64,000 nucleotides of DNA from positions 33,604,001 to 33,668,000 of the forward strand of contig CM074512.1 in the NCBI GenBank assembly GCA_037379345.1, written 5' to 3'. Every line of letters starts with the position of its first letter. Position 1 is the first letter of the stretch. Below the pieces are notes generated by a model. It saw nothing but the letters and a program-made list of their open reading frames with translations. It had not been told where the DNA came from and searched no databases. The stretch comes from Perna viridis (lineage: Eukaryota). Below are positions 1-23,765 of the stretch, in pieces. The position numbers and the translations under genes were made by a program.

Positions 1-1635
1 AGGAGTTTATCAAAATGTTGTATACTATAAGTAAAGTATATTATAGCAAAAGAAAATGAAAGTTAAAATAAAAGATTTTGAGGTAGTTAAAAACATTCAT
101 TTTTTTCCTTTAGAATAATTCTTTCCGCTATATTAAAGTCAAATTCTTAGAAAATTTGAAATTGTTCCCTTTCTAAAATCATTGTTAATGACTTGCTGAA
201 CTATCTAATGCTGTTGAAGATCAGTAATCTGTTTAATGTTAAATATATTTTGGTTCCACTCCTCAATTTCTCATTTCCATAATATTTTCTGAATACTTTA
301 TGAGTTGCTTAAAATTTATGCTCTGAAGATGTATTTTTAATTTGAGTACGGTATTAATATTAAGCTATGAGCTTTTTTTTTCATTAAAATTTCAATAAAA
401 ATTTATGATTAATAACTTTCTAATTGAGTTTTAGATTATGCTCTCATTTTGCATAATCACACTTCAATATTCATGATTATTAAAGTTCCCATATTGGTCA
501 GGAATAAAAAAAAAATGTAGAGTTGTGGTTTGCTTTCACCAATTCCTTCATACAGACTCTCTCAGGAGTAATTTTGTTCTTTTATATAATCATATTATCA
601 CCACAGTAAGGATTGCCCATTGAAAAGCGTAATAAAAGGATAATAGATATTGAAATTCTGTTGTAATTAGCTTGGTAAATAAGCATTTGTGTTAGTGGGT
701 ACAAGGTTTGGCAAGATTGTAGGTGGCTTTGGTAATGGAGGTTTCTAGAATCACAATATCCAACTGTCTGACATTTGTCATTTTGATGAAATGATATCAT
801 ATTTAGAAATAGCAGTGATTTACAAATTGCATGTTGCAATGTCGCAGTGATGTAAAACCAATATGGTTCTAAATTGTCCATTTTAGATTGTAGCCACGTC
901 ACAAATGTAAGAAGGCAGATAAAACTGTCATTTTTAGAATTTGGACACGTCACTGGTAATATAATTGAACATGTAAATCACGATTTTATTGTTTTTGATT
1001 ATTTTACATAATATGATTTTCTAATCGTATTGAGCATGATTCATAGTCTCAATTGATGATGGCAATTACTGGCTTGAATTTTATATTAGGATAGCTCTGG
1101 GTTTTACAAACACGGGATCATAATCCAATCTACTTTAACTTGTAAATCTAAGTCTTATCACTGCTTGGTTAATTAGTTTATTAAGGGAAAGTGGCATGTA
1201 TTAACATCCCTGATTTTGGTTTGGTTAGGTCAGGGTTTTTATCTTGTCATCTTGTTTGAGCCTTATATAAGGCTTTAGAATAGTCAATTTTGGTGAAAAT
1301 TATAGTCAAACACCAGTAGTCATTAAGTTAGATAGAGAAATTAAGGTTGATAATTGAAGCTTCAATAAATATTCTCATTTGGCAGAGATTAATAGTCTCT
1401 GTAATATGGAATTTTGAAAAATGAAGAAAATTGATACTCTAAAATTGAGGTACCTTCTTTAAGTGTACTGTTGTGAAGAATGTCCTCTTGAAAAAGAATA
1501 TATTATAGAAAAAATAGAGAAAAGAATTCTTATTATCCAATTTAGGGCCATCAAGAGGCATGAACATATATAACCAATTAAAAATTTGACATTAACATTA
1601 ACATCATACACATGTACATATTTAAACCATAAAAA

Positions 1636-1696
1636 ACTTTTCTTTTTTAGGTAAGTGGTGTATTTTTGTTCTTTTGTTGTTCTTGGTTTGGTAAGT
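1636..1696 (+). promoter_or_regulatory. Candidate recursive splice site (ratchet point) with 40-nt cryptic RP-exon
   Basis: cttttcttttttag|gtaagt (AG 1649-1650, GTAAGT 1651-1656), followed by a second donor ttg|gtaagt at 1691-1696. Confidence 0.55.
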
Positions 1697-3191
1697 AACT
1701 GTTTCACTTATGATTATTTCCATTGAAAAAAACTGTGAACTTCTAACGTCCAGTGATAAATAACTGCATTTTCAAATAAATATGTCAGTGCCAAAAAGTA
1801 TTAAACCATGAAAGTTTTGAATCATCTGCCAACTTTACCAACTCTAGTTAAGAACAAATCTTTTTAATGATTTTGATTGATTGATTAGCAATTGGAAGTT
1901 TTGCCCTTAGTTTTGCCTATTTATCAGTTTTTTTGCACTTTATTTCCAAAAGACTACAAAAATATTCCAGCTATTAAGAGTTTATTGTCACTTTGATGGG
2001 TATTGAAGTATTTGTTTGGTTTGTACAAGTTGACAAAAAATTGCATGTAAACAATGTAGACAGGCCTCCAATTGCTCAGATACTTATTTGGTCATCTTTA
2101 TTTATGCATTATAGAATAATATCACCATGGAAAAAACACCATTCCCTGTTTGCATTTATTCCATCAATTATGCTTCTAACAGTAAAATAAATAGTTTAGA
2201 AAGAAGAAATAATTTTACAATCACTACAAATGATAGTCTTGTTATTATGTCGATAAAAAAGACCTCAAGTTAACGGATTCTGTCTGTGCTAAACTTGCTT
2301 AATTGAGTCCTTTCTATTGACAAGGGACAACATTTTGTGATAATTTGCTTTGTCAATGGGTATGGAGGACACAATGTCTTTTGTAACACTTTTTTTTCTA
2401 TACAGTTTGATCATTATTTACCACTAATGAGTAATAACTGTCCATTGGTAAATTGATTTCTTTATACAAGTTTCAGGTCTAAATTCACTTACTAGAGTGA
2501 AAATGCCAGATTTTGGAAATTGCGCTTCTGCAGAATTCTATTGCATGATCAAAGCTACAAATCAAATATTTTGTCAACAGATGTCATTTTCAATTTGGTC
2601 TGCACATTAAATTCTTTCCCCCTTTCTAAAAAATATATTGAGAAATGTAAGACACAAAAATATTTTACACCTTACAATAATGTTTTTAGTGAATCATCAT
2701 TGAAAAAATTGTGTGTAAGTTGAGCAGGTATATAGAGTGACTTAGGGATATAATTTGAGATTTTGGCAGGTGTTCGTTCTAATTAGTAATTATTCAGGTT
2801 TTATTGACAGGAAGGCTTATTATAGCAATATATACCATTTACATTCCAATGGGAAGAACTTGAACATGATGCTTCTACTTTAATCATTTTCTCAATTTGA
2901 TCAAATCTTAAATCACTTGTCTTGAGTTCAGTTGTACTTGTGAAGCGTGACTGCAGTCGTAATGATAGTGTTCATTTACATAGAACTATAATTTAATTGG
3001 TTGTTGAGCAATAGTTTTGTAAAAATTTGCTTTTTCGTTATTATAAGATTTAACTTGTAGACATTTTGAACAACTGTAATGTAGTTACCCAAAACAATAT
3101 TTGAATCTGAATAATAATGAAAATGTTTCTTTGGCATGTATGTATTTGTAAGGATAGAGTAACATTCTGTAGTGAATCCTGGTTTACATAG

Positions 3192-3347
3192 AAGAAGTAT
3201 TTAAGGGAACCAAGATTCTAGCATAAATCAAAAGAATGTAATCCAGGGACAAAGACCCGACATGGAAAACAGACATATGCAACAAAGAACATAAAACAAA
3301 TATAATAATACATACAAAGTAACAAAAGTGAATAAGCAACTCAGACT
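3192..3347 (-). mobile_element. 3'-end fragment of the same Penelope-like family
   Basis: aagggaaccaagattctag...aaagaatgtaatccagggacaaagacc...catggaaaacagacata...catacaaagtaacaaaag matches 30450-30595. Confidence 0.75.
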
Positions 3348-6300
3348 GGAAAAAGTCTGCTAAGGAAAATATTGTCAAAATGAAAACAAAAGCTGAAGGA
3401 GTTCAGAACTATAGGAATAAAGAGATAAAGATAAATTCAAATAATGCTGTAGCACCAATGATTTGTAAAAAGAAAATGCCAGGATGGAGTGTTAAATAAT
3501 TGCTGTAAGAGTTATCCTTCTTGGCTACAATCCAAGGTTAACCTCTGAGTAGGAGTGCAAGGTTATTGCAGTATGTTTTTCATGTTTTTTTATGGAACTG
3601 GCCATGACTTTTTCTGGAAGTTATTAATTAGGATTAGCGTTAACTTCCTGATTTCATCTTAACCTATTTGCCATAAGTTTCTAATACCTGGTATTGTTTC
3701 CTTCTTTTGTTTTCACGATAATGCTTTTAATTATTGCAAGTTCTTTGAAGGTTGAAAAAACACGTGACAATGACCAATCAAATCTTAAAAGCAAAGTTGG
3801 ATAATACAAAATGGTAATGAAATGATTTCTCTGTTCAGTTGGATTTCTAATTTTGTTTTTTAGCTTACACCCAGAATAAAAAAGAATTGTCAAAATATTA
3901 ATTTTTCACTAAATTTGTATTGGGCATGAAGCATTAAAGAATCTCCATAATCATTTCTCATGCAATGGAATATCTTTTCTTTTCTGAGACCATGAAATTC
4001 AAAATCTGAAATAATATATATATTTTTTTTTTTATCAAACCTGACATTCTAGGCAACTGGTGAAAAATCTACATGTATTTTTAATCCTTTTTCCTGTTCT
4101 TATTTTCAACAAAACGTTTTTAACTTTGTGGTGACTAAATCTGAAGCTGTACAGAAAACTTTCTAAGTAGTTTTCTATGAAACGACTATAATAAGATGTC
4201 CATGAGCTAATGTATCAGTTCTCAAAGTTATAATTCAGCCTGAACATTACCTAGGCCTGTTTTTTAAAAGTCAAATCCTGTGAATAACAAGCCAATTACA
4301 GGAAAAGAAAATGTTGAAAACTTTATTTTTGGCTTGTGAGTAAAACAGTTTATCATGGAAAACATGTTTTACTCACTAATTTGTTGTTTATAACCAGATA
4401 AAATAAGGATGTGCTTCTAACATAGTATACTGAGAAGTTAAGGCTAATCTTTAAAAATACTATCAGCATATGATAATAGTACCAAGTAAAATAACAGCTG
4501 GAAATGTTTTTCATTATATTAATTATCATAAGTATGAAGCTATTACTGTAGATATCATCTTATCTTTCACACGAGTATGCATGAATACCGTATACTCTCA
4601 CACCTTTTTGTCAACTTTTGATCATTGTTTTTTTTTTTCTTTAATATTTTAAAATTAGTCAACCTGTTTTATCTGATTATCACTGATCCAGTCATTTTAA
4701 AGAGAGGAAAAAGGGTAGTTTACCAATTTGTCAAATACACTATAAATGAATTGATGGATTGAATTGCACATGAAATTAATAAGTTTTTTTCCCATGTGAA
4801 TTGTTCCATAATTGAAAAAATGAATTGAAAGAAAAAGGTGAATACCCCCTTCTATCTGCTAATATACAGCTCTTTGGTTCCAACAGGTGCCTGATCAGAC
4901 AATTTTCTCACAAGTTATAGATAAGTACACTTTAAAACTGAAATTTTAGTACATTATTAAATTTTTTTCTTAAGTTTCAATAAATGAATGAAACTCCATG
5001 TTGTGTATATCTGATTCTATCTAAATAAAATCCTGGCTTGCCTTGTCTATTCTAAGGCCTATTTTCCATTAGGCTCATATGAATTGAGATGGTTTTGAAG
5101 TACACTAACTTAGACAATAGATTGCTTATATGGCTTATTTATTACATTGACATAATAGGTATATATCTTTAGAAATTTTTATAATGGAAGATAGACATGA
5201 AGAAATGTCCACTTAGGGACTTAGAAACAGATTGTTAGAGTTAAGAGAAAATGCTGTTTGTCTATAAGTAAAGCTCTCTTGTACAGTGATAGATGGCTTG
5301 GAAAGGTCAGCTAGATTGAAAAGGTTTATAGAATTTGGATTGTAGATTTTTCATCAGCTCATGAAGAATGATTTGATCAAATGGCAATTGTCTAATGGCT
5401 CCTTTGTGGTTATTTTAAAGCCACATTATGGGCCAGTTGTAAACAGATGTGTCTAATGCTTTACTTATTCCATGTGGTGGCAATTGGCACATGTTCACAG
5501 ATTTTGCTAAATTAAACTTGACCAAGGTGATAGTTGTAGAGTCCTGTGCAGTTAAAACTCTAGCACCAGGAATAAAGGTTTCAGCTGACCCAGGTGAGAG
5601 TTATAGAGTCTTACATATGCACTTGAAACTTGAGTAAGGGGTTTAGTTGACTCAGATGAGAGTTGTAGAGTCCAGTGCAGTAAACTCTCCAGCACAAGGA
5701 AGGAGGGGCTTCTTGTTTCATTGCTGATATTTAAATGAACTCCTTCAATTTTTTTCAAAGCTGAAGCACAAAGTTGTTGACCTTAAAATACAAATTAATG
5801 TTGATTTAGGTGTATCTTATATAATTACAGTTTTCATTGAAGAGGTTTTGACTTTTTTTTTTCCTTTTCCAAAATGGATGTGTCTTTCAATAATATGCTA
5901 AAGACTTAAATATAATAGAAAATTCTATGGGTATCATCTAAGTATTAAATTGTATTGTTTCTTTGCATGAGTCTATTTTTTTCCCCTGACTTTCTTCTAT
6001 TTCAAGACATTTCCATACATTTAATGCTACTTAATTACAGTTTTGTATAGAAATGTAGTGTGTAAGTGTTAGACAAAATCTAATTCCATTAGTGGGTCTT
6101 TACTGTGAAGAATAGAGATGACTGATCACTTTTATAGTCTTCAGAGTCAACCATGCAAAAAAAAAAAACTGCTGGGACGACATTTCTTGACAAGAATTTC
6201 CCATTGATAGATCTTATACTATATGTCACCAATTGTTAAAAGCACTCCCAAATAATGGAAATATGAAATGGGCATTAATCACATGAAATGATACTCTCCT

Positions 6301-6499
6301 TCATAATTCATTGGCTTGAGAAAAAAATGGAAATCTTAGACGACAAACACAAATTTGCGATTAATACAATGTTCTAAGTACTATAGGGTTAATATCTTCA
6401 TTTTGAAGATGCAATTTATATGGCTGATTCGGAAATGTAGCACAGTCCTGTTAGAAAACTGTCAATGAGACAGTGGCATCAATAGTTTGCAATCTGGTA

Positions 6500-6931
6500 A
6501 TATTAATTACGTAGTGATTTAGTGGCCGTGTTCAGAATTTACCCTGGTCAGTATATTTCATACCCGGCAAGGCACAGCCGAGCCAGGTATGGAATCTACT
6601 GATTAGGGTAAATTCTGTAAACGGCCACTCAATCGCTATGTAATGAATTTATCCCATCGATGACTTTGTTTTTGTTTTTTTTTTTTAAAGAAAAAAAGAT
6701 AATTTATACCCGATATTTATATAGCAATAACTTTTGTTTTGTATGTCATCTGCCGTAAGCGAAGCAAAACGTTTGGTCGCCATTTTGGTTGTAGTAAACT
6801 AAAAAACGATAACTGACCGGGTATTGCTAAAATAGTGACCGTGTATCGGAAATACACTGTCCTCACGTGATCAAAATACAGAGCGCCGATTAGTTGATTT
6901 CAATTGATAATTATCAGAGGTGGGGTAAATA
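6500..6931. mobile_element. CpG-rich non-autonomous element with a 139-bp terminal hairpin (family uncertain)
   Basis: Hairpin 6506-6644 with ~63-bp arms. A second short inverted pair is atttatcccatc (~6647) / gtggggtaaat (~6920). The internal motifs cgccatttt and tcacgtga and the CpG enrichment contrast with the flanks. Confidence 0.6.
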
Positions 6932-9660
6932 CAAAATAACCTGTTAAATTTAGTGAAATTTCTGATACAAATATTCAGGGGAATCATAGGATAATAACTG
7001 ATACCATGGCCTGAAGGTTGCAAAAACCATGCACTAAACCTGCAGGCAAAGAGGGTTCAGTTAGGACAAATTTAATTAGTCTTGTATGGTTACAAAAACC
7101 TTGCTCAAATATGTAGTCAAAAATATGTTCAGTTTCAATGTCAACTTGCATTCTTATAAAACTGAAGTTGATTATTTTACATGAAATTTAGTATTTTTTT
7201 GCTGAAATTCTTATTGCTCAGTCATATAATTGTAGCTATATAAAATTTAAGCTGTGTTTCAAGGTTTGTTGAAAGGTTATTTAAGGAAACCCCAGTTTCT
7301 GCATTCTCTGTTCATACATGCTTGATACATTGCAGAATTTTTATCAATATTTTGGCATATTTCATGTGGTTTTATGATAAGGAAGTGTGGCGTGGAGGAT
7401 ATAGTGCAGTATGCTTTGGAATTTTTATTTTGGTAGATTTATATCCACTGCATACCAGGAAGATGATGAAAAAATATGCATCAAAAGTTTGTATGTGATT
7501 GTTGCTACTGGTTTTATGGTCATAAAGATGTGTAATCTGTTTACTGTTTGTCTTAATTAAGCATTTAAGTTGCAGTAAGACATTGAAAAGCCTTGTCTGT
7601 TAGTGCAACTGTGGAGGGCACTTGTAGTTTTTGGCCGATATTGCTAACCACCATACAATTGTCAATTTGAGGACAAATTCTTGCATAATCTTAAATTTTT
7701 TTATTTGTCTAGTAGTTTCATGGTTTTGTTCATCTATAGAGCTCTTTGATTTTGATATTAGCAACCTTGACATACTATTTCTTTCTGGACTTTTGAAATT
7801 TGATTGCTATTTCTAATGATAGCATACTTTCTTGATTTGTATATAGGGTTATTAGATTGAAACCTGAAGATTAGGAGTATAGCTTTTACTTTAGTTTGGC
7901 TGTGGGACCAATATTTAAATTACTTGGCCATCAACTTTCTATTTGCTAGTGAAGTGAGTCAAATATTTCTATTTAATTTGTCTGTTAGTTGCTAACTTCC
8001 GTGTCATTTTAAACTTAGTTATACATTGAAAATGATACAATTCAATTTCTTGCCAGACATCAAATGTAAAATGAATTTGTCTGAGAAAAAGAAACTGAAC
8101 CAGGTCCTGGATATTTAGTGTTTTGTAAATAAGAAAAAATTTCGGGCTTGAAGCTGATTTACATGCAAGATAAATAAACTTTCGTATGTTCCCTCAGCTA
8201 CATGTTTTAAGTTCACATGCCTCATAGGATTTTATATAAGTGTTTCACAAGTTAATGTCATGTTGAAGGCTAAAGACAATTTGTTGAGGTGACAACCAGC
8301 AAAGTTTATCATGTCCTTTTTACTTGTTTAAGACAACATTTTAGTCATTTTAGGGATGTGTCGTTTTGATTGACATTTGTGAATTAGCTGAAATTGTCCC
8401 TAATGATTGATTTTAAGATATAAGTAATGGCAAATCTCGCATGGAAAATTGTAATATTTTGAACTAAGCATAATGCTTGGATGAATTAAAATATGGTTTA
8501 GAAATATCTTTTTTCATCACAATGGCTTTTTTTTATTTAAAGAGACTTCAGAGCATGATTTTGTTTACTGGCATTGGATTTGGCTTTTGGTTAAAAGAGT
8601 TTGAATTTGTCAGGTTTTTGGTTTAGAAAGAGTTGAAATTTGTCAATTTTTTTTTTTTTTTTGAAACATTCATTTTTTATAGAGTTTTGGTGAAGTAGAT
8701 GTTGGATTTGTTCTGTTTTTGGTTTGGCTTGATCAGTTGCCTATAACTACCACCTGTATGAATTAAGAGTGTGTAGGTTTTCCAACTAGTTTTGAAGGTG
8801 TTTCAGGAGTTGGTATTTGGATTGACATTTCAGGGATGTTCACTGATTTACCAGTTTGTAACCTGCTGTAGGTATTTGCCAGTGTGCTGGCACCTAATTC
8901 TCAATGTACTCTACCTACCATCTTTCCATTCTAATGAGTTCGAGTGCACACCAGGATTCTGATTAACTCAATTTTCATGTTGTTTCTAATACAATCATAA
9001 TGTTTGAATGCACTTTTACCCGCTTTATTCAGTTTCATCAATCAATGTTCTGCATATTTCTATCAGTGTTGTCTTTGGAAGTCTTTTGGGGCACGAATTG
9101 TTCTGTAAATCATGTTAATTTGCTTGTGATTTTAATTTGTATCTGACTATGGCTAAATGCCTTCTGACAGAAATGTGTATCTTTTTTTCTAATTGTGCTG
9201 CATGCAATAAATCTATTATTCTCTCAGTGTTGATTTCTGGGTTCTTTTTAAGTCAATCTTCTCAACTTTTCCAGCATTTAAGATTGCTTCTGAGTTCTGA
9301 TTTGCTGTGTCAGTATTAAATAGTGCTAAAAAACTGACACTGCAATTTGTTAAGTTTATTTTGCAGTGTCAGCATTTTTTGTGTGTGCTGTACTGTTAGA
9401 TTGAAATACAGAAAGTTTAAAATTTACTTAGTGTTTTTAGGCCATGTTGCTACTGTCAATCTAATGGAGTATCAGTGTCTTTGTATTCAAAGGATAATAA
9501 CCTCCATTTGAATTTCTTGATCAAATCATGATATAGTATGTATTAACTTAAATAGGAAGAAATATTTTCATAGAGCTATTTGAACAATAACATTTTCTCA
9601 GCTAATGACATGATTGGGTAGCCTTTTTAGGTGTTCCTCAAATTGATATGTAGGTTAATT

Positions 9661-9693
9661 CTGCTAGAATCTTGGTTCCCTTGATCACTCTTT
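9661..9693 (+). mobile_element. 33-bp extreme 3' tip of the same Penelope-like family (opposite orientation)
   Basis: ctagaatcttggttcccttgatcactct is the reverse complement of 54682-54709. Confidence 0.6.
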
Positions 9694-10709
9694 CAATGAC
9701 CTTCACATTACCTTAACCTTCATATCTTTGTACTTTTATGAATGAAATGGAGATATTTGTTTATATACACTGAAGTTTGCCTCTATCTTTTTTTTTTTGC
9801 CAAGATACTAATCTGTTAAATTAGAGAATGCCTAATTTACTTTAATCAAGTGTGAAAATAATGTGATGTAAATTTGATCAAGTTTCAATGATCAGTAAAG
9901 CTACACTATAATGGCACATTTTAAGTTTTGTTGATTACATCATGTCAGTTATGATAAATGAGTAGTTTAGTTCACACTTTGTGAAATTGCAATTTATGCA
10001 TGTGATTTCTTGAATTTATTGATAATCTAATTCTCCAAATTGTTCACTTTGCCCAATTATTGAATATGGGTTTGATATTTTAGATAAAATTGAATTCCAG
10101 TTTTTTGTTTCTGTTTTTTTTTTAACTTTTCAATATTCAATTTAAGTATTCAATGCAGTTTTAGTCCTAGTTTCATAGAAATGAAGTTTTTTCAATATCA
10201 TGAATGTCTGTCAGACATTAAAAAAAAAGAAGGTAGGTTTATCCTACAGTAAAAACCTAAATTTCTAGATATATTAACCACTACATAGTCCTGTAACTTG
10301 ACATTGCTGATTTGCAGTATTAAAACGGAAAAACTTATTCACATGCTCTCTGAAAAAAGCACTCATCTATATGTTTGTATTCTTATGAAATGAGTTGAGA
10401 TAAACTCTCAGTATAAATCTTCAGCTATTGCTTTTTTGTATCTGGCAATGTTCCTTTGATTTTTGAACTATCATTTTAAGTTATTATTTTATAATGGAAT
10501 TTTTTATTGGAGTTAACTTTATTGTTATAATATCATTGTCAGTCCACACCCAATTGCTAATCAGTGCTTTCAGTACTTTGATTATTTTAAATGGCCCCTT
10601 TATCTTTTAAGACTTTTTGATGGATAAGCTAAATGCTTTAATTCCTGTTTGTATAAATCAAATCAATTTTACAGATGTTTAACTCAGTAAATACAAAACT
10701 TCTGAAATA

Positions 10710-10965
10710 GGTTAAAATTTCAAACCTAGATATACTTATTATAAGATGTTAATGTTCCTTGCCAAGTGTGTGGCAAACAAGAGACAGACTGGTTGGCTTG
10801 GAGTCAAAATTATATGTCAGAGAGAACAGTGGCATGTCCCTTTTGAGCTATGGCTTCTGTAAGCTAGTGTGATAAATTCCAGGCTAGGTCTGTTCAAATG
10901 ATCAAACATTTTGTCCTTAAATGTATTGAATACTTCCCAATGAAAGTAACACTTTAATCGATCAA
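10710..10965 (+). mobile_element. Degenerate SINE resembling mollusc Meta-domain SINEs
   Basis: agactggttggcttggagtcaaaattatatgtc...catgtc...aagctagtgtgataaattcca resembles my recollection of the common bivalve SINE core (agactggttggctcggaatcaggataatgtgtcc...gagctagcactataaaaatcc). Not verified by alignment. Confidence 0.45.
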
Positions 10966-11841
10966 TTAGTCTGATTTTCTAACATGCATAAGGCAAGCAT
11001 ACATGTATGTATTTATACAGTGCTGTGACTTGCATATTTTACTTTAAATCCCCCATATTTGTAAAAGGAGATAATTTGATAAGAGGACAAGAGTTTAAAA
11101 AGTGTTCAATTTTGAAATGCTAGCAATATTGACTGCTGAATAGGTAAAAACAAAATCTTAATAGTGAATTTTGTTGCAGGTCTTAACTTACTCTGGTAGA
11201 GGTCATGACCTCAGCACATTCCCATGTCTTGCAAATATTTTGGAAAGCATGACAAGTAAAGCAGTGCATGTACAATATATTGTTCTGATGCTCATAATGT
11301 AATATGCAGTAGAATGGATTTTAGAACTACATTTAATGATATGATAAACATTGGTAAGAGATCAAAATATAAATGGGATCTTTTCTTTACAGAGTTAGTG
11401 CCCCAATTATTTGAAATCATGTGACATGTGACTGGATCTTTAATTTCATCAGGGACATTTGAAACTTGATATCATTTAATAAATGTTTCAATTGATATTT
11501 TTTATTTTCATACCTGCAAAATATAGATTAATAATTCCAATGTCATTGTTTGAATGACTTGCTGATTGTATAATACTGAAATTATTTGTCTTATTTTGCT
11601 TATAAAATTACCAAAAGTCATTCTTGAAACAAGCAATTTATACTATTTATCAATTATTAATCATGATATGAATAATTACTGTATTCCAAACCCTTGGGAT
11701 GGTTGTTGTTAAGACTCCCTTACACATGAATTCATTTCACCAGTAGAAAAAAAAAAGAGTCATGAGATGTTCCGTAGAACATTTCATGTCAATTTTAGAC
11801 AATGAAAGGAATGTTTTATTTACAACAAAATATGTACCTAC

Positions 11842-12103
11842 CATAGATTTCAACTATCATGCCGAAGGGCATGACTAGTATCGATACTAAGAGATCCGCT
11901 ATGGCAAGAGACATCAGAAAATAATTTGTCATATTTTGTAATCGACGGTCCCATATCACAGCAAGGCACACTAATAAATTTCCGAGTGAAGTACAAAATA
12001 TCAGTGGTATTAGGGATAACATTCCCCATCGTAACTCTCTCTCTTCTCCAAAGTCAGAAGAATTTCCTACACTTTGATTTAGAACAGTAGTATTTTCTAT
12101 CAT
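11842..12103 (-). CDS. HTR2: Second 5-HT2-type receptor paralog (gene B), coding exon 1 (N-terminus, TM1, TM2); the remainder probably lies beyond the left edge
   Basis: ATG 12103 has an in-frame upstream TAG at 12142-12140. The exon encodes sequons NTT/NQS/NSS and [48 protein letters not shown]. The donor TATG|GTAGGT (GT at 11841-11840) falls after 87 codons + 1 nt, the same residue and phase as in gene A. I recognised no TM3-7 exon in 1..11841. The subtype call rests on TM1-2 only. Confidence 0.85.
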
Positions 12104-13187
12104 GATTTGTTCGCACTGTGTTTTATGTTCTCTGCATTTCTATTGCATCTCTGTATAATAAGTTTTCATTAAACTTTATTCCAATCACTTATATTTTCTC
12201 CAAAATGAATTCATCTTTTCTCATATTCCTATTGTTATACAAGTTATGAAAGTTAATCTTAGTTGTTGTACTTAGTGTTTTCTAGATCTTTGATTAATTA
12301 GTAATCATTCAAAAACCTTAAGTGGTTTATTCTTAGCTCTCATGGATATAAGTTAAAACCACAAATTCTTTCGTTTAAAACATAAGGTACAGTGCACTGA
12401 CTCAGTTTTCATTTATGTATTTAAAACATGTGTAAACTGTTTGAAGATGATAATGAAGAGCTCAGGACAACCTTCTGTGATAGCACACCAACCCACTCCC
12501 AATGTTCATCAAATCTTCACAGCTGCCAGAGCATCAATAGTCCAATCAGTGATCAGCATTCTCTGATGATTTGGATCAATAAATTGTTTATATGTGGAAT
12601 TGTTATTTAGTTTTTTAATGAACCGAATAAGATGTTAATTGATTCTCAAATGTTAGGAATTAACACAAGGTAATAGATAATTAGCGTTGGTGGAATTACC
12701 AGATTGTTCTTTCCAGAATGTCTCTGTTTAGACAAAACATCCCAATTACTGAACAAAATATGAGAAAATTATGGTGTAAATTGTTATTAATGATGTATCA
12801 AAATATAAGTATTATGATTAATGAATGTTGTTTTCTACAGTATTGGTATATTTTTCCATATTTAAGACATTTTTCCTTTTTTGTTGTAAGTAGTTTTACA
12901 CTACTGATGACCTGTATAATTAAGATACTTTTCCCAGAATGTACCAGGATGTTAGAACTTGATAAATTACAAGAGAAATGTGTTATAAATCTAGTTCTTA
13001 AATTGTAAGGGTAATCATAATATATTTCTTTTGTGATTTTGAATGTATAAGAAAAATCTTTGTATTATTGTTACTTAGGATCATACCATTCTGTGCAATT
13101 TTTGCAGTTCCATATTTGGTATAAGTAGAAACTCAATTCAGTATGCAGTATTTTTTGTCATCATTAATTATACATAAAAAAAATCCT

Positions 13188-13260
13188 TAGATAAGTCGAA
13201 GTGGACGATAAGTCAAGGCTGAAAAAAAAAATATTGACTTATAGTCCAGAAAATATGGTA
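13188..13260. mobile_element. Terminal remnant of a mariner/pogo-like element
   Basis: Repeated gataagtc and the terminus gacttatagtccagaaaatatggta resemble TA-flanked CCGTA-type mariner ends. Only one end is visible. Confidence 0.4.
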
Positions 13261-13412
13261 ACTGTGTACTACTGACTTTACCATTTTGTCTGTTTTTGTT
13301 GAGATGTCTAATCAATGAATTAAGATATAGTATTGTATAGTTTCGTTCTGTACTAGACAAAAATATTTATTTCATATTCAATTGCATTGATGAACTCAAA
13401 GAAAAACAATTA

Positions 13413-14064
13413 CAGTCGAACTTCACTCGCTCGAACTCAGATGGCTCGAACACCCAGGATTTCTCTAACACATTTCAAAGTACCATAATTTTCTCCTATA
13501 TAATCAATATAAATAACCTTGGATTTCTAGAACTTTGATTTCTCGAACACTCAAACTGACTAGTTGGTCCGTTCAGTAATAAATCTTAGAGAATAACCCT
13601 CACTAACTCGAACTCTTAAGCCATTTTGTTAGTTTGGGTAATAAAAGGTTTGAAAAACTGAAACTATATCATTAATCTGTGTCATTTTCATTAATAAGAG
13701 GTAATATTTATGTCATCACCAAGGTAGTTTTGATCTTAATATAACACTGATTGAAGTTCGAGAATGTTCCAAAGTCGGTATGATGAAGGCATGAAAGAAA
13801 ATTGGATGAAAACAAATTATTGACTAAGGAACTCGAACTCTGAACATTTTTAAAAGTGAACACAGCATTTTTCATGTCCACAAATCAACATAATCTTCTG
13901 AAAGTAAATGAAAAAGATCCACACAACTTCGTAGGAAGTAACCAATTTCTAATGATGAAGTCGAACTCGGACCGGCATCGAAAAAAATGTGGAAATATAC
14001 GAACTTCAATTTCTTGAACACATTTCAATGGTCCCTTGGAGTTCAAGCTACCGAGGTTTGACTG
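13413..14064. mobile_element. Tc1/mariner (pogo/Tigger-like) MITE
   Basis: TA|cagtcgaacttcactcgctcgaactc ... gagttcaagctaccgaggtttgactg|TA: imperfect ~26-bp TIRs starting CAGTC, a TA TSD, and internal subterminal ctcgaac repeats. Confidence 0.75.
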
Positions 14065-15319
14065 TACTTCAATGGCAGTAAAATATGTCTTCTTACCACA
14101 ATACAGTGAATTTAGAAGTATTGAAGATTAATGATTCTTTTCTGCTTTTTGTAAAGTGAATGAATATAAATACAAGGTTCAAAAGGGAATAATCACTAGT
14201 TAAGCTTACAGATGAGTTAACCAATCTGACCTTTGTTGACCTCTAGGTAATAGAGTGGGCCTTTATTATGGTTAGAGTAATCTCCCCTGATTACCTGAAA
14301 CCTGCTGTTTTTCTCTCTTCTGCTTTATCTTTGTTTTATTTCATTATCTGACAAGGTTTCTGCATTCTGCCTAATTTGTGAATTATGATAGCATCTTTGA
14401 TGTTATTTATAGAAAGTAAAAGGCCTTGTCACTTTGGTCAAGGTTGTATATGTAATAATAAAGTAATATTCCAGTCACAGTTTGAGATTGCAGTTTGTTT
14501 ACCAATGTTTAAAAATCATAACATGCTTTTGATGTAAATAGTTCTGGTGTGTTTGTGGCCATTATTTCACATTTAGAATTTGATTTAGTTTTGACTTTTC
14601 AGGAAGGGTTGTAAAATCTAAAATATGGAAGTAATCTTCTGCTAATCACATGGTGTAAATATGGAAAAAGTCTACTCAGGACTTGAGATGTCACCAACTT
14701 ATGATAAGTGATATCTCTGTCAAAAAGCCTCTCTAAATTAATAGTTACACCTGCCTCACATTCAGACGTACAAGATCATTGCCTCTATCTGCCAGTCATT
14801 GCTTGAATTACATTGTATGAATAAATTGAGTCTAGTCAGAAACTTTTGCACTCTTGAAATGGTCACATGGTCATTTTAATTAAAAAAAAAAAGTTGAAAA
14901 TAGAGCCATATATACATACCAAATTGTGACAGGTAAAGAGTAGTTTGGCAATGATTTGGAATAAAGGCATTACAGGTTGGTTGATAAATTATGCTGGCAA
15001 ATAAAATTTGTCTCTGTTGTCAGACATGGAAATAAGCAATAAACTGATGGTTTAATTGTTGAAGCAGCTGAATAATAATGACGAAAAGTCTGAAATCAAT
15101 TCACATATTAAACTGAAGGACTTAGCTATAGGAAACAATTAACTGAGCGGATCACAAAAAGTAGTTTCCAACCAAGGCTATATAGTCCAAGATTTAGTTT
15201 AGAAATAAGCTGTGCATTGAGTTTTTTAGTACTCAGCACATATTAATTTTCATATTTATATTTTTGTTTACATGAAGGATAGTATAAAACATTAAATTTT
15301 TGTGGAAGTTTTAGTTTGT

Positions 15320-15533
15320 GTTATACCACACTTGAAAACCAGCAGTGCATGCTTGTCTGCCTCTGTGTAAGTCTATCCCAAGTTCTAATCTGCAATTTCC
15401 CTCAAAACACTGAATTGAATTTTATAAAACTTTCACCATTGTGCTCATTTTTTTTCTGTCTGAATTATTATTGGGGTTTCTTATATTGTTTCTAGGGAGG
15501 GGATATTACAAAGTGAGCTTTTCTCACAGTTTT
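15320..15533 (+). mobile_element. Degenerate HINE-like element
   Basis: ttataccacacttgaaa...gtctgcctctgt; 3' ggggatatt...gtgagcttttctcacagtttt contains the gtgag..ctcac palindrome. Confidence 0.4.
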
Positions 15534-16244
15534 TCGAAGAAAGTGTCCTTTTGTGAACATTTAAAGCAGTCTTGGGTATTTTCTTTGAAGAATGGTACAA
15601 TTTGAGGAATGGTTTCAAATTTTAAACTGTCTGAAAGAAGAATGATCCCAGAAATCTTTGGAAATACATGTGAAAGATTGCAGCAATAGATTTGGGATTT
15701 GTTATGATTTTTTTGCTGTTTCTTTGTCAAAGGTGTAACATACAGGATGAGTGAAGCTTTGTATGATTGGTTCAACATGCCTTCTTTTTATAGGCAAAAG
15801 TTGTGTTAAGATAAACTCAGATTTAGGCCAACTAAATTTAATAGCTAGATTTTCTTCCAGGGGTCCACAAAAAAGTTGAGTGGTTGGGAGGATTTTATTT
15901 TTTTGTCCTGTAACTTGTCTAGAATTACAAGATGCATATGGAATTGTCATCTTAGACCGTTAAACAATTAAAACATACATAGAGATCTTCTTTCATATAT
16001 ATGTATTAATATTAAACCGTATGTGTTATGATCCTTCTGTATTTAGACCAGCAACAACTTTAAACATAGTATACACCATTTTTATTGCAAGGAAGTGTAA
16101 TAAACACTCTAAAACCTATATCACACCAGATGTAGACATGTAAAAAATCTGGATATGTAAATTTGAAAAAAAAATATACACAAAATTGGGGCAAGGATGA
16201 AAATCTAACAGTTAATTTTGATTGGCCTTATTGTCGCAAAATAT

Positions 16245-16640
16245 GTAAAACGAAGAGGGATTTGGTAAATATAACGAAGAGACAACAATCCCCATCAGGA
16301 TGAATAATGTCAGCTCACGGCCATAATTGGTTCTTCAAAGAAAACCCTCATACCACGTGGCAGGCTGCAGCTACCCCCAAAAACAACATTATACACAGTT
16401 ACAGCCAAATAGTTGCCCTTTATTTAGACTCAAGCAACATAAAAGCAAACTGAAATTGAAAACCAAACAATACATACAGAGGCCAGGAACTCATGACTTT
16501 GGACAGGCACAAAAAATGTGACAGTGTTAAAATACTTTGCCTTGATCACATCCCTCCCCTAATTTGGGAAAAAAATACTACACAATTAAGTACACCTAAA
16601 AACCAGTTCAAAAAGATCTGAGTCACTTGTTAAAACAGAA
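16245..16640. mobile_element. Interspersed repeat (retro-derived family, unclassified); related copy at 53765-53900
   Basis: gaagagacaacaa...ggatga...aatgtcagctca.ggccat...tcttcaa...aaaccctc..accac..ggcaggctgcagct is shared between 16277-16372 and 53795-53900. Confidence 0.6.
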
Positions 16641-16798
16641 ATAAAGAAATGGTCTTCTTCATTGATCATATTTTCTGGTTTTAATTGGAATTCAAGGACA
16701 AAACAATCTGATCAATGAAGAAGACCATTTCTGTTTTAACAAGTGACTCGGACCTTTTTGAACTGGTTTTTAGGTGTATTTAATTGTGTAATATTTTT
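16571..16798. repeat. Long inverted repeat (~100-bp arms, ~35-bp spacer)
   Basis: aaaaatactacacaattaagtacacctaaaaaccagttcaaaa...ggtcttcttcattgatca (16571-16668) pairs with tgatcaatgaagaagacc...tttgaactggtttttaggtgtatttaattgtgtaatattttt (16709-16798). Confidence 0.9.
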
Positions 16799-18280
16799 GT
16801 GAGCCTTCATGTGAAATTCATGTTAACCATGATTCACATCCATTACATGTAAACAATATTTGCCTATGTCACTTATTGTGTAATGTTGTTAATAAAAATA
16901 GACTCCATCTTCTTTAACTCAGTTATTATTATGTTTCACCATAACCATTTCTATTTGTACTTCTGCTTGGTTTTATTGATATCTATCATGTCTTCTCAGA
17001 CTTATAAGTTGACAATCTACTGGTATGTGAGTTTACAGAAGGAACAAGTGTTTTTATTCTTTAAAATTTGCTGGATCCTTTACATATACTGGTAATGTTG
17101 TCATTCTAGTCGCCAGTCCCTGATTTCATATAAAAGAATCTACAAACTCAGATTTACCAATAATTATAGGATGATCAAAATCCATTGTTTTAGTTGTTGC
17201 TTTTGTAGACTTTACTTTCTTTCATTGGTTAAATGCAGTTTTTTTATTCAAATTTGAACAGGTATTTTTCTTGGAATTTAAATGGAAGATAAATAACTTC
17301 CTTGATTTGTGATGTTTAAATAAAACGAATATTTGATAGCATTGGCTTGTACTTGCCTCCTAACAAAATAGTTTCTAGGCCTAAAAGTGAAAAAAAAAAA
17401 AATGATGAATGTGCTTAATAAATGCGATTAATTTGGATCATGCCTGGGGAATTTTTTATTCAGTGATGGATGCATCAATGCATTATCCTTCCTCTCTAGC
17501 CCCGTGGACACCAGTATTTTTATCAAATTAATTACCACTTAAGAATTGTAACCAGTTTTATTTTTAAAGTTTTTAGTTCATTTTTCAATTGTCACTATAT
17601 CCACTGAATGGTTCTTCATCGATTTTCAATTAGGCAATGTGAATTGCCTGTTAAGACTTTTGTACTATTTGTTTAACGATTTTTTTCTGCCTACAGATTT
17701 ATGCTGTCTTAATTGGATGCTATGGCAGTCTCTTTTATCAATGTGTCATACATGTATTTTTCTTCTTTTTATTGCTTAAAAGTGCATTCTTTGCTTCGTG
17801 AAATAGTTTGCACTTTTCTCAACTCAACTTAAGAGAATATCTTTATTGATATGAAAAGTAACTTAAAAGTTCTTGTGTTTTTTCTCCTTGTAATTTTACA
17901 ATTTTGCAATGAAATAATATGTTAAAATCTTTTTTCAAACCGTGTATTTGTTTTCTGTTTTGGAAGATTTACTTCTACAAGTATTTGAAGTGGTATAATA
18001 GAACTAAGGAGTAGATGCTCACATTGTGTCTACCTAAAATTGCTACAGAACTGCTATACATATCAAACAAATCATTTTTAAATGCAAGCGTACAATGTTC
18101 TTGCTTTAGCCTTTTGGGTATGACACCTTCTTTGTAGGGTGGCAGTTTTAAAGGAGTTAATATAATTTGACTGAAAAGTTTTATTTGTGAGTTAGCTCCC
18201 TTTGTAAATAATGTTTTGTGTCATTTTTTTTATAAATGACGTTTTGATTCGGGCTATTCTCCTTTTCTGATAAGCAACTA

Positions 18281-18937
18281 TACTCGGCGTCACATAAATA
18301 ACATACTGTTAAAATTTGAATAAAAATATTTTCTACGACTTTATTGAGACCTACCGTCGTTTAAATTGTCTTAAATGACTTGCTTATTCGTTTAGCCAAA
18401 CGGCTTCTCCCTGAACAAGTCGCTTTTAGCTTAAATCATGCGTAACAAATCCTTACAGGAAAATCCCATACTAATATCCGCCATGTTGGTTTCTACGGGA
18501 CGATTTGTTTACAAACGAAGTTCGTAAGTTCCCGTCGAACTCTGGTGACAATCGTCTGTTTGATTAACTTCTCGGTATTGTACGTTGTTCGCGTAAAATA
18601 AATCCGAGATATCCGAAATGACGCCGAAATGCATTCTGGGTTCTTCGGTTTTTGGACAAACCATTTAAACGTAAACAACATCGACCATTTAAACGTAAAC
18701 AACATCTCCTAGCAACCCGATCACTGTAAACATGGCCGACTTTTTACAATGTAAATATTGGCACCGAGAATTAAAATCTGACTGGAATTTAACGATTCAA
18801 TGTTTAGGGAGAAGCCATTTGGCTAAACGAATGAGCAAGTCATTTAAGACAATTTAAACGACGGTAGGTGTCAAGAAAGTCGTAGAAAATATTTTTATTC
18901 AAATTTTAACAGTATGTTATTTATGTGAGGCCGAGTA
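18281..18937. mobile_element. Long-TIR non-autonomous DNA transposon (TA-flanked, probably Tc1/mariner-type), ~657 bp
   Basis: Near-perfect inverted arms 18279-18417 and 18801-18939 (tatactcggcgtcacataaataacatactg... / ...cagtatgttatttatgtgaggccgagtata). The core is CpG-rich and contains a duplicated accatttaaacgtaaacaacatc. The superfamily call is tentative. Confidence 0.85.
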
Positions 18938-18999
18938 TACACAGTATACATATAATAGCCGAAGTTTCAAAAGCTATTGTGATGTAATAAATTAAGTCT

Positions 19000-19406
19000 T
19001 AATATCCCCGTTTTGAAGGAGAAGGGTTTTCTGTTTTACCCTTGTCTGTCTGTCCCTCTGTCAACCACACTTTTTTCATATCAGTTTTCTCTACAGCAAT
19101 AATCACATTCCTTTGAGATTATTACACATGTGTTTTATTGGTGCCCCATGCCGTAGACTTTGATTATGGACTTGTACTACAATAAGCTCCATGATGATGA
19201 TGGTTTACACTTGATCATATGATATTAATATAAAATTTCCTTTGTAACTACTTGTCACAATCACCTAATATTTTATCACAATCTTCATATAGGTGTGCCA
19301 TACCTGAGATTTGATTTTAGGCTTGTGTACTTAATATTTTAACAATACATTAAAGTTGAGATCCTGGGGTATCACTAATAGGCATTGGGTCTCAGATTTC
19401 TGGTTT
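19000..19406 (+). mobile_element. Degenerate HINE-like element
   Basis: 5' atatcccc..gaaggagaaggg stem, tgtctgtctgtcc microsatellite, and 3' ggggtatcact...ttctggtt end. Confidence 0.5.
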
Positions 19407-21177
19407 ATTCCTTGTTGAATTGTGAATAATGTACTGAGTTGGCATTGCTAAAATTGTTATTTATCTGTCACGATTTATTGTTTTCTTTACATATGTATGT
19501 ATATGCACTGAATGCCTGATTTGATATTGTGCAAATTCATATCAAAACACATTGATATTCATGCAGAAAATCTTTTTATCCATTTTGGTTAATGGCATAT
19601 GAACAATAGTGTTTTGATGCTTTATAATCATGCTTTTAGGCCATTCATCCCATGTGATGTTTAGAGATGAGACAACAATTTCAACTCTCTCTCAGTTCTA
19701 ATTAGTCACTTAGAGCTACAGAGCTAGTATGTTGATTTCTGCTCAAGAGGTACACCAATTAGTCACTTAGAGTTGATGTTTGATTTTGTAGTGTTTAGTG
19801 ATTAGCGATTGAGGGGGTGGATGAGGTTAATATACATCAATCGGTAAAGTCATTTCCTCCTGTATGGTTTATTCATTCATAATACATTTGATCCTTTAAG
19901 TAAGGTTTGATGTGGTAGAATGTCTACATAATTTGTATGTGGATCGTGTCTTATACATTAAATGCTTAGGATGGTACCTGTATGAAGCACCTGTTCTAGT
20001 TAGGGAAAACTTTTTGTGTAAATGATTTGAAATGTGTGGGTACTTGTCTTGTTAGGCCACTCATAAGTTATTACTTGTTTCTCTGACATTTTGAAGAAAA
20101 AAAGTGAGAATAAGTTATACTGTTTTTAGCAAACAATTTCAATTTCAAATGAATTTCAAGAAATTTTTAAAAAGAAGTGACAAGCTTTAATTAAAAAAAA
20201 TGAAATTATCATTTAAGTTTCTGGTGCTAGCTTTTCCTCCAAGACAAGTAAAATAATTATATGGCCTTTGTTTCTCAGAGTATTTGTATTTTGCACCTGC
20301 TCATGGCTCTTTAACTATTTTCAGTTTTTGATTTGCCATACCTACCATGTCTTTTACAAAGCCTCTCCACAGCTGCTATTCCTGTTGTCTTGTGTTTTGA
20401 TTTTCAGTACTTACAAACTTTTTTCCAACGTATTTCCATATGCAGCTGTTACAGTTGTATTGTGTTTTAAGTAGCAGTTCTTATGTGACTTATCTAAGAC
20501 CCTTTCGCTCAAGTTGTTTGTTATTCCATAGTAATATTGATTCTGCTAAGTATAGGCATCTGAAAGCTCATATATGTAGGGCTTTGTATCTCAGCTGTTT
20601 AGTGTACTTATATGTACATGTGTTTTCACATATTGATATTGTTTTTCAAGTTTGAATTGGGCTTGGTAAGAACTTGTTTGATATGTGATGGTCTTTTAAG
20701 AGGTTATGATAGGGTAATCTTTGGGATTGATAATAGGTATAGAATTATGTGGTATATAAATTTGAATTACAGGTCTTTATTAAAATCAGGCAGGTACTTA
20801 AATAACTGATATACATTGAAAATTAATTGTAACATTGTATTTTTTTCACTGCCAAAATACACTCAATACTCCATAGATATGATCTTTATAAGATTAATGT
20901 GCAGATCCACAATGGTGAAGAGGGTTTTAACCATTTGAAAATTGTTCGAAATGTCCAACAAAATTTTCCTACCATTATTTCCTGTATAGCCTCTTCAGAA
21001 TGGTCTCTTTTCTTTAGGGTTAGAGATACCTAGTTCTCACTTTGACTAGTACTTAAGTCCTTGGTTATTGTTAATATTAGACATTTTGATTTGGTTCAAT
21101 TTAGGTATACTTAGATCATGTTTGGATGACTTATATATTGTTTTATTCAAACATACAAAGTTCATAGAGTAAACAGA

Positions 21178-21360
21178 TTTTTTATACCCCAATGAGAAGA
21201 AGGGAATATACTGTTTTATCAAGTGTCTGTCTGTCTGTTGTACACTTTTTTTCATAACAGTTTTCTCTGGAATGAATTGTCACAGCCACTCAATATTTTG
21301 ACACAAGCTTTATTTTACGTGTTCTATATTAAAGGATTTGATTTTTGGTGTGAACAGAAT
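21178..21360 (+). mobile_element. 5' part of a degenerate HINE-like element
   Basis: tttttatacccc...gaagggaatatactgtttt...gtgtctgtctgtctgt followed by cagttttctc, as at 19000. Confidence 0.5.
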
Positions 21361-22878: not shown

Positions 22879-22948
22879 TTTTTTCATGTTTTTATTTCTT
22901 TATTTTCAGGTAAGAAAATATTTTTGATAAGACATTAGTGTGGTATGT
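22879..22948 (+). promoter_or_regulatory. Candidate recursive splice site (ratchet point) with 33-nt cryptic RP-exon
   Basis: ttttttcatgtttttatttctttattttcag|gtaaga (CAG 22907-22909, GT 22910-22911), followed by a second donor gtg|gtatgt at 22943-22948. Confidence 0.55.
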
Positions 22949-23048
22949 ACAATTATACTTGAATTAAAGTAAAATCTTAAGAAGCAAAGTTGGTATTAGT
23001 TTATGCATCTGTGTGTATGGTATAGTGATTGAATGCTATAATACTTAA

Positions 23049-23607: not shown

Positions 23608-23765
23608 GGTCTCATTAACCACTTCTAACATTTCCATTATTTTGCATGTTAAAAAAAAAAACACTTTCAAAATTTCACTGTGAATTCCCTGGACAAATGA
23701 TGCATACTATAGCAAAGATTGTGAATTAAGCCTTTCAAAATCACTATACTTATGGTATGATAATG
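23608..23765. mobile_element. Truncated second copy (left end) of the Harbinger-type MITE
   Basis: ggtctcattaaccacttctaacatttccatta...actgtgaattccctggacaaatga aligns by eye with 25246-25410 and is preceded by TTA. No right TIR was seen. Confidence 0.75.

What the first reader, a model, noticed from the sequence alone, without database searches (positions are those of the whole stretch)
1636..1696. Recursive-splicing ratchet point with a 40-nt cryptic exon (plus strand)
Seen: a 12-nt pure pyrimidine run ending in the acceptor TAG is fused directly to a perfect donor GTAAGT (tag|gtaagt, 1650/1651), and a second perfect GTAAGT follows at 1691. Established: in Drosophila and vertebrate long introns, recursive sites are 3'ss-5'ss fusions defined by a short downstream cryptic exon ending at another donor. 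Inference: this is a functional recursive site in a mollusc, a group where I know of no description of recursive splicing. By a rough estimate AGGTAAG alone could occur a few times in 64 kb by chance, but the full tract + fusion + paired-donor layout is much rarer, and it occurs twice on the same strand.
Basis: partly seen in the sequence, partly recalled or inferred. Interest (0 to 1): 0.75.

Follow-up and report, generated by a model that had tools for sequence, protein, structure and literature searches.

The report
Candidate recursive splice site, mussel PSMD1
A perfect "acceptor fused to donor" motif lies on the sense strand of a 99-kb intron of a mussel proteasome gene, so it may let that intron be cut out in steps as in flies, but no RNA evidence shows this yet.

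Summary

The window's only coding exons are 5-HT2-like receptor exons on the minus strand. But 100 kb of fetched flanks on each side show that the whole window sits inside one 99,063-nt plus-strand intron of PSMD1/Rpn2. The site is therefore on the sense strand of a giant intron, as recursive splicing requires.

That intron's sense strand holds three strong fused motifs (window -5969, 1651, 22910). The expectation is 0.43-0.59, with P(>=3) about 0.01. There are none on its antisense strand or in the other 165 kb fetched, apart from the intron's own donor.

Against it:
- Three RNA-seq runs gave zero reads at the site, so there is no test either way.
- Genome-wide the motif shows no excess (17 against 15 reversed controls; full layout 3 against 2).
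- Conservation could not be tested.

Verdict: a credible but unproven recursive site (about 0.45); chance is about 0.35. This scan has noted similar candidates in other long introns of this genome.

The parts
1..64000 (+). The whole window is interior to one PSMD1/Rpn2 intron on the sense strand. The intron runs from window -26206 to 72856 and is 99,063 nt long.
   Evidence: The flanking plus-strand exons match human PSMD1 residues 534-609 and 625-668. The 65-nt micro-exon found fills the gap. tblastn of P0219 gives contiguous residues 618-644 and 642-680. Boundaries are ...TTCAG|GTAAGT and ...TTTTCAG|AACTCC. Plus-strand skew across the PSMD1 span is GC +0.056 and AT -0.068, against about 0 outside it.
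1637..1650 (+). Candidate recursive 3' splice site: a 12-nt pure pyrimidine tract followed by AG, with T at -5 and -6.
1651..1656 (+). Ratchet-point donor GTAAGT. Joined to the upstream exon end ...CAG it would rebuild CAG|GTAAGT, the same 9-mer as the intron's own 5' splice site.
1651..1690 (+). Putative 40-nt cryptic RS-exon. It is not a multiple of 3. Given the phase of the upstream exon (...TTC AG), inclusion would read AGG TAA, an immediate stop.
   Evidence: reading of the sequence; inference.
1691..1696 (+). RS-exon donor TTG|GTAAGT. It matches 7 of 9 positions of the MAG|GTRAGT consensus (recalled), against 9 of 9 for the rebuilt ratchet donor.
   Evidence: P(>=1 strong donor hexamer at +20..+60) is 0.029 in this intron.
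1516..1635 (.). Old dispersed-repeat fragment that abuts the site. Any branch point for the site would lie in or just after it.
   Evidence: 76-77% identity to C2:14385153-269 and C5:45749150-241. The similarity stops before the pyrimidine tract.
22888..22948 (+). Second fused motif, 21,259 nt downstream: gtttttatttctttattttcag|GTAAGA, a 33-nt interval, then GTG|GTATGT.
11842..12103 (-). Exon 1 (coding part) of 5-HT2-like receptor gene B, nested antisense. Its single coding intron runs from 11841 down to window -1798, so it contains the site on the wrong strand for this gene.
   Evidence: Pfam 7tm_1. The Mytilus galloprovincialis protein P0002 aligns residues 1-88 here and 88-719 to L005:6348-8237. 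Splice signals were read.
37944..39076 (-). Exon 2 of 5-HT2-like receptor gene A (TM3-TM7), nested antisense.
56072..56402 (-). Exon 1 (coding part) of receptor gene A.

Best explanation
The site is a candidate recursive splice site (ratchet point) in the 99,063-nt intron of the proteasome gene PSMD1/Rpn2.

Proposed mechanism (inferred, not shown):
1. The 65-nt micro-exon ending ...TTCAG is first spliced to the acceptor at 1650. This removes 27,857 nt, or 20,237 + 7,620 nt if the weaker motif at window -5969 is used first.
2. Recognition of that acceptor is helped by exon definition across the 40-nt cryptic exon 1651-1690 and its donor at 1691.
3. The junction rebuilds CAG|GTAAGT, which outcompetes the weaker TTG|GTAAGT.
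4. The rebuilt donor is then spliced onward, probably to the second fused site at 22909|22910 (21,259 nt) and finally to the true acceptor at 72856 (49,947 nt).
5. No trace is left in the mRNA.

Shown: the motif, the strand, the host intron and its size, and the local excess of such motifs.
Inferred: every splicing step.
For: - Motif is perfect, with T at -5/-6. 99.5% of Drosophila ratchet points have TT there (passages of bioRxiv 10.1101/006163).
- It lies on the sense strand of a 99,063-nt intron. Drosophila recursive introns are 11,341-132,736 bp and the removed segments 2,596-63,580 bp. The segments here are 20.2, 7.6, 21.3 and 49.9 kb.
- A downstream donor sits 40 nt on. Drosophila RS-exons are about 50 nt, with a donor generally weaker than the ratchet donor (passages of PMC8605326). 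Here the match is 7/9 against 9/9 to the consensus.
- There are 3 strong fused motifs on the intron's sense strand against a simulated mean of 0.43-0.59, P(>=3) 0.010-0.015. There are 0 on its antisense strand. In all 264 kb fetched, both strands, the only other hit is the intron's own 5' splice site.
- 2 of the 3 motifs have a strong donor at +33 or +40, where the chance per site is 0.029.
- The three sites are not copies of one repeat.
- From the genome-wide rate, the expected chance number of the strict full layout in this intron is about 1.4e-4.
Against: - No RNA support. Depth is 0 in bins 1201-2000 in all three RNA-seq runs, with no joints or loose ends at 1650/1651/1690. The data had almost no intronic coverage, so this is a non-test rather than a refutation.
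- No genome-wide excess: 17 against 15, 63 against 117, and full layout 3 against 2. Fly-like abundance of such sites is excluded, and about 2 chance copies of the full layout are expected somewhere in the genome.
- With relaxed criteria the intron shows 8 sense against 10 antisense hits.
- My thresholds were set after seeing two of the sites.
- The pyrimidine tract is only 12 nt, is preceded by an A-run, and abuts a repeat fragment.
- The last 50 kb of the intron has no strong motif.
- The motif at -5969 lacks TT at -5/-6 and has no downstream donor.
- Conservation is untested.
Confidence: 0.45

Rival explanations
1. Chance motif with no function. T- and G-rich sense-strand intron DNA threw up a pyrimidine run next to AGGTAAGT, with a second GTAAGT nearby, and the spliceosome ignores it.
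For: - Genome-wide counts equal or fall below the reversed controls: 17 against 15, 63 against 117, full layout 3 against 2.
- At window level, 11 of 100 shuffles reach the observed 2.
- Relaxed criteria give 8 sense against 10 antisense hits.
- No RNA reads lie on the site.
- The scan looks at very many windows, so rare layouts will be met.
Against: - Its position on the sense strand of a 99-kb intron was not known when the site was picked.
- There are 3 strong motifs in that intron against about 0.5 expected (P about 0.01), and none in the other 429 kb of strand examined.
- Two of the three have a donor at +33 or +40 (0.029 each by chance).
Confidence: 0.35
2. An ordinary cryptic or 'poison' cassette exon (1651-1690), or a decoy exon, that the spliceosome recognises now and then. 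There is no re-splicing at the rebuilt donor. Inclusion gives an immediate stop and the transcript is degraded.
For: The sequence has a good acceptor and a good donor 40 nt apart. Inclusion would read AGG TAA. Absence from poly(A)-type reads fits decay of such transcripts as well as it fits non-use.
Against: The exon would begin with a perfect GTAAGT that, once joined to ...CAG, is a stronger donor than its own 3' end (9/9 against 7/9). The fly work quoted says the stronger donor wins. No read shows inclusion.
Confidence: 0.12
3. The element belongs to the antisense 5-HT2-like receptor gene B, whose intron also contains it. It could be an intronic regulatory element or part of an antisense transcript.
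For: The site lies inside gene B's single coding intron, from window 11841 down to -1798 on the minus strand.
Against: On the minus strand the sequence reads as no splice signal. No Rfam family matches in the window, there is no tandem repeat, and there are no reads.
Confidence: 0.03

Closest known systems
Drosophila intronic ratchet points with cryptic RS-exons (Ubx, kuz, Bx and several hundred others). Sources: passages of bioRxiv 10.1101/006163 and PMC8605326.
   Same: - Pyrimidine tract, then AG|GTAAGT, with TT at -5/-6.
- Sense strand of a very long intron.
- Segment sizes of 7.6-50 kb.
- A short out-of-frame cryptic exon (40 nt against about 50 nt) ending in a donor weaker than the rebuilt one.
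- More than one site in the same intron.
   Different: - No junction reads, lariats or saw-tooth profile have been seen.
- Conservation is unknown.
- This genome shows no excess of the motif, whereas flies have hundreds of sites.
- The host is a housekeeping proteasome gene, not a long developmental or neuronal gene (the latter point is recalled).
Vertebrate recursive sites defined by RS-exons in long genes (Sibley et al. 2015, known to me only as cited in PMC8605326).
   Same: Same logic: exon definition of an RS-exon, then competition between the rebuilt donor and the RS-exon donor.
   Different: Only nine fully suppressed intronic sites were noted in mammals. They lie in long neuronal genes (recalled). 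This one has no experimental support.
Pseudo-exons or decoy splice-site pairs in long introns.
   Same: A good acceptor and donor a short distance apart in a giant intron, absent from mRNA.
   Different: Here the acceptor is fused directly to a perfect donor. This is the specific mark of a ratchet point and is rare in this genome (63 Y8NY-AGGTAAGT in 1.45 Gb of strand).

Membership tests
Recursive splice site (ratchet point with RS-exon) | 3' splice site fused to a 5' splice site: pyrimidine tract, YAG|GTRAGT | tested here: met
   cttttctttttt-AG|GTAAGT at 1637-1656.
Recursive splice site (ratchet point with RS-exon) | TT at -5/-6 of the acceptor (196 of 197 fly ratchet points) | tested here: met
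   Positions 1645-1646 are TT. This is a fly-derived rule, and its relevance to molluscs is unknown.
Recursive splice site (ratchet point with RS-exon) | Lies on the sense strand inside a long intron (11.3-132.7 kb in flies) | tested here: met
   99,063-nt PSMD1 intron on the plus strand, with the site 27,857 nt from its 5' end. The intron is defined by protein homology and splice signals, not by RNA.
Recursive splice site (ratchet point with RS-exon) | Short cryptic RS-exon ending in a donor that is weaker than the rebuilt ratchet donor | tested here: met
   40 nt. TTG|GTAAGT (7/9) against CAG|GTAAGT (9/9). Judged by consensus match only; no trained splice model was used.
Recursive splice site (ratchet point with RS-exon) | RNA intermediates: upstream exon joined to the ratchet point, lariats, saw-tooth read density | tested here: inconclusive
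   Depth is 0 at 1201-2000 in X4-X6 (1.56, 1.94 and 1.94 thousand million letters read), and there are no joints or loose ends at the site. Intron coverage was almost nil, so intermediates could not have been seen.
Recursive splice site (ratchet point with RS-exon) | Evolutionary conservation of the AG|GT core against diverged flanks | not testable with these tools
One metagenome contig shares a 29/30-nt island with unrelated flanks, and its origin is unknown.
Recursive splice site (ratchet point with RS-exon) | Genome-wide excess of the motif, as in flies | tested here: not met
   17 against 15, 63 against 117, full layout 3 against 2. This is a property of the fly system as a whole, not a requirement for a single site.

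The most novel reading that the evidence does not exclude
The giant PSMD1 intron of this mussel, which houses two antisense 5-HT2-like receptor genes much as human PSMD1 houses HTR2B, is removed in three or four recursive steps at window -5969, 1651 and 22910. That would make recursive splicing a working mechanism in Lophotrochozoa, and so probably ancestral to bilaterians. Here it would serve a housekeeping gene whose intron was kept long by its nested genes.
Probability: 0.3. Interest if true: 0.7.

Novelty: new member of a known kind. Interest (0 to 1): 0.5.

Why it matters
Recursive splicing is established in flies and vertebrates. My library searches found no report for molluscs: 0 papers for 'recursive splicing' with mollusc, bivalve or octopus, and 2 incidental mentions with mollusk.

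A proven site here would extend the mechanism to a third major animal branch. It would also give a simple test case: one highly expressed gene, one 99-kb intron and two or three candidate sites.

It would further bear on how a housekeeping gene copes with an intron kept long by nested receptor genes. As it stands this is a well-placed candidate, not a demonstration.

Tried and rejected
**First reading, rejected.** After I held that the site was a chance motif lying antisense in the intron of a minus-strand 5-HT2-like receptor gene, with no plus-strand host. Scanning 100 kb on each side overturned this by showing PSMD1 exons on the plus strand either side of the window.

**Repeat origin, rejected.**
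- Only window 1516-1635 matches other loci, at 76-77%.
- The three fused sites do not align with each other.
- There is no tandem repeat in 1-6000.
- The 18-mer core with up to 1 mismatch occurs 6 times in the genome against 2 for the control, and only ours is exact.

**Known RNA family.** None reaches the gathering score in the window.

**Conservation.**
- A metagenome scan with a 24-nt core gave one contig, L024. It shares 29 of 30 nt, has unalignable flanks, has no other match in this genome and has no downstream donor. I cannot say whether this is chance or homology.

**Test planned but not done.** I wanted to compare the strand skew around the 17 strict sites and the 15 reversed-control sites.

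**Trained splice-site scoring.** Not done, because it would have needed exact exon joins. Consensus matches were used instead.

**Papers.**
- I saw only passages of 10.1101/006163 and PMC8605326.
- I saw one table row of PMC5562334.
- For the rest I saw search listings only.
- Supplements were not opened, and the Drosophila site tables in them could refine the comparison.

**Earlier notes of this scan.** Searches were used as leads only.

Full report
**The observation.**
- cttttctttttt occupies 1637-1648.
- AG is at 1649-1650 and GTAAGT at 1651-1656.
- A second GTAAGT is at 1691-1696, leaving a 40-nt interval, 1651-1690.
- The acceptor has T at -5 and -6.
- The 'second occurrence' is at 22909|22910...ctttattttcag|GTAAGA, followed by GTATGT at 22943 after 33 nt.

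**What the window seemed to hold.**
- Every convincing coding ORF in the window is on the minus strand and is a rhodopsin-type receptor (Pfam 7tm_1): 11842-12103, 37944-39076 and 56072-56402.
- A paralogous 610-aa ORF lies just before the window (L005:6345-8177).
- Its nearest named relatives are molluscan proteins that their sources-HT2A, dopamine D2-like or octopamine receptors. The best is a 719-aa Mytilus galloprovincialis protein at 77% identity.
- That protein aligns residues 1-88 to the window exon at 11842-12103 and residues 88-719 to the upstream exon. GT and AG signals sit at the seam.
- The site therefore lies inside the single coding intron of a minus-strand receptor gene, on the wrong strand for that gene.
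- At that point I took the motif for chance.

**The turn.**
- The plus strand is G>C and T>A along the whole window.
- I fetched 100 kb on each side and listed long open frames.
- Plus-strand frames on both sides of the window match 26S proteasome non-ATPase regulatory subunit 1 (PSMD1/Rpn2).
- The exon at window -26844..-26623 covers human residues 534-609 (E 3e-38).
- The exon starting at 72857 covers human residues 625-668 (E 2e-22).
- The missing ~15 residues are in a 65-nt micro-exon at window -26271..-26207.
- tblastn of full-length PSMD1 homologues found gives contiguous query residues across the gap: P0219 618-644, then 642-680.
- The boundaries read ...TTCAG|GTAAGT and ...TTTTCAG|AACTCC. 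The intron runs from window -26206 to 72856 and is 99,063 nt long.
- The other PSMD1 introns seen are about 12 kb or less.
- Strand skew marks the same unit. Across the PSMD1 span it is GC +0.056 and AT -0.068, against +0.011/+0.015 to the left and +0.008/-0.002 to the right.
- The whole window is therefore sense-strand intron of a plus-strand gene, and the two receptor genes are nested antisense in it.
- The intron is defined by homology and splice signals. I have no RNA read across its junction.

**Is the motif more than chance?**
The answer differs by scale.

| Scale | Observed | Control or expectation |
|---|---|---|
| Window, pattern with up to 1 mismatch | 2 | 0.56; 11 of 100 shuffles reach 2 |
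| Genome, Y12-AGGTAAGT | 17 | 15 (reversed pattern) |
| Genome, Y8NY-AGGTAAGT | 63 | 117 (reversed pattern) |
| Genome, full layout with second GTAAGT 20-50 nt on | 3 | 2 (reversed pattern) |
| Host intron, sense strand, strong motifs | 3 | 0.43, 0.50, 0.59 (simulated means) |

- A fly-like abundance of such sites is therefore excluded, and about two chance copies of the full layout are expected somewhere in 723 Mb.
- Inside the host intron the picture differs. I used the rule YAG|GTRAG with at least 11 of 15 pyrimidines, set after I had seen two of the sites.
- Under that rule the sense strand has 3 hits and the antisense strand 0. The hits are -5969 ccag|GTAAGC, 1651 ttag|GTAAGT and 22910 tcag|GTAAGA.
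- Markov simulations of the intron (order 1, 3 and 5; 200 each) give P(>=3) of 0.015, 0.010 and 0.015.
- In all 264 kb, both strands, the only other hit is the intron's own 5' splice site.
- Two of the three sites have a strong donor at +40 or +33. The chance of one at +20..+60 is 0.029 per site.
- With relaxed rules the signal vanishes: 8 sense against 10 antisense.
- The three sites are not copies of one element.
- A repeat fragment at 1516-1635 ends just before the pyrimidine tract.

**RNA.**
- No listed holder of the stretch was on record as RNA. Three paired-end RNA-seq runs of the same species label were offered as raw reads.
- I laid them and one small run on window 1-6000, with 19-25% of each large run read.
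- Depth was 0 in every bin from 1201 to 2000 on both orientations. No joint or loose end was listed at 1650, 1651, 1690 or 1691.
- The only pile (3225-3295) is a short repeat whose reads run on into unlike sequence (97-99%).
- Intron coverage elsewhere was a few single reads.
- Such libraries could not show a recursive intermediate of a nascent transcript, so this neither supports nor refutes the idea. It does show that the 40-nt exon is not included in abundant mRNA.

**Comparison with known recursive sites.**
From the passages I read, fly ratchet points have these properties (for 10.1101/006163, for PMC8605326):
- They are juxtaposed acceptor and donor sites with a prominent pyrimidine tract, and 196 of 197 have TT at -5/-6.
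- They lie in introns of 11,341-132,736 bp and cut them into segments of 2,596-63,580 bp.
- They are highly conserved.
- They need a cryptic RS-exon of about 50 nt whose donor is generally weaker than the ratchet donor.

Here the segments would be 20.2, 7.6, 21.3 and 49.9 kb. The rebuilt donor CAG|GTAAGT matches the consensus at 9 of 9 positions against 7 of 9 for TTG|GTAAGT. Inclusion of the 40 nt would read AGG TAA, an immediate stop. All sequence-level criteria are met. The RNA and conservation criteria are untested, and the genome-wide excess seen in flies is absent.

**Verdict.**
Its unstated premise, a long plus-strand intron, turns out to be true.
- The site is a credible candidate recursive splice site, which I put at about 0.45.
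- Chance remains a serious rival at about 0.35. There is no global excess, my thresholds were post hoc, and the scan examines very many windows.
- A non-recursive cryptic or poison exon gets about 0.12.
- If real, it is a new member of a known kind in a phylum where my four searches found no report.
- Other first-stage and follow-up notes of this scan describe similar candidates in other long introns of this genome. I did not test those, and they are not counted as support.

Noticed in passing
window 11842-12103, 37944-39076, 56072-56402 (all minus); L005:6345-8201 (minus): Two tandem 5-HT2-like receptor genes lie nested antisense inside the 99-kb PSMD1 intron. Each has one phase-1 intron at the same place between TM2 and TM3. 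A human SNP table lists one intron variant under both 'HTR2B, PSMD1' (PMC5562334). From recall, human HTR2B sits in a PSMD1 intron, so the nesting may be very old. Notes s1-753412 and s1-763658 of this scan say the same.
   Followed up: partly
window 39071-39080 (minus): The true acceptor of receptor gene A exon 2 reads tttgcag|GTAAAT. An ordinary exon that happens to start with a donor-like hexamer shows that fused motifs also arise at plain acceptors.
   Followed up: no
L014:3729-3793 (window -26271..-26207), plus strand: The PSMD1 exon before the giant intron is a 65-nt micro-exon. It begins with GTCAGT directly after its acceptor AG and ends in a pyrimidine-rich ...cctcctgttCAG|GTAAGT, so it too scores as a fused motif.
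   Followed up: no
L005:4031 (window -5969), plus strand: A third fused motif lies in the same intron, outside the window: tatttttccttctggtgtccag|GTAAGC. It has no TT at -5/-6 and no donor within 120 nt.
   Followed up: partly
L024:586-615 (contig JAAUYA010431474.1, 1352 nt): A metagenome contig shares 29 of 30 nt with window 1639-1668, including the AG|GTAAGT core. Its flanks do not align, and the contig has no other match in this genome. It carries a long inverted repeat just downstream. Chance or a conserved island: unexplained.
   Followed up: partly
window 3225-3295: A short stretch has about 50-75x depth on each orientation in all three RNA-seq runs and very high depth in a fourth run. 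However, 97-99% of reads run on into unlike sequence. It looks like a fragment of an abundant, expressed dispersed repeat.
   Followed up: no
window 4601-4800 and 3940-4194: There is a small cluster of reads in run X6 with the first mate almost only on the minus strand (2.96 against 0.19). A 254-nt contig of run X7 lies at 3940-4194. This may be intronic transcription or repeat-derived RNA on the plus strand.
   Followed up: no
whole genome G000: Y8NY-AGGTAAGT is about half as frequent as its reversed control (63 against 117, binomial p 7e-5). Yet the share with a pure 12-nt tract is higher: 17 of 63 against 15 of 117 (Fisher p 0.024). This may reflect selection against decoy sites together with a small class of real ones, but I did not follow it up.
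   Followed up: no
window 34550-34990, 47446-47667, 58317-58933: There are long open frames made of tandem peptide-like repeats on both strands. The weak Pfam hits at 34613-34987 have no significant stretch. These are probably satellite-like repeats, not genes.
   Followed up: no
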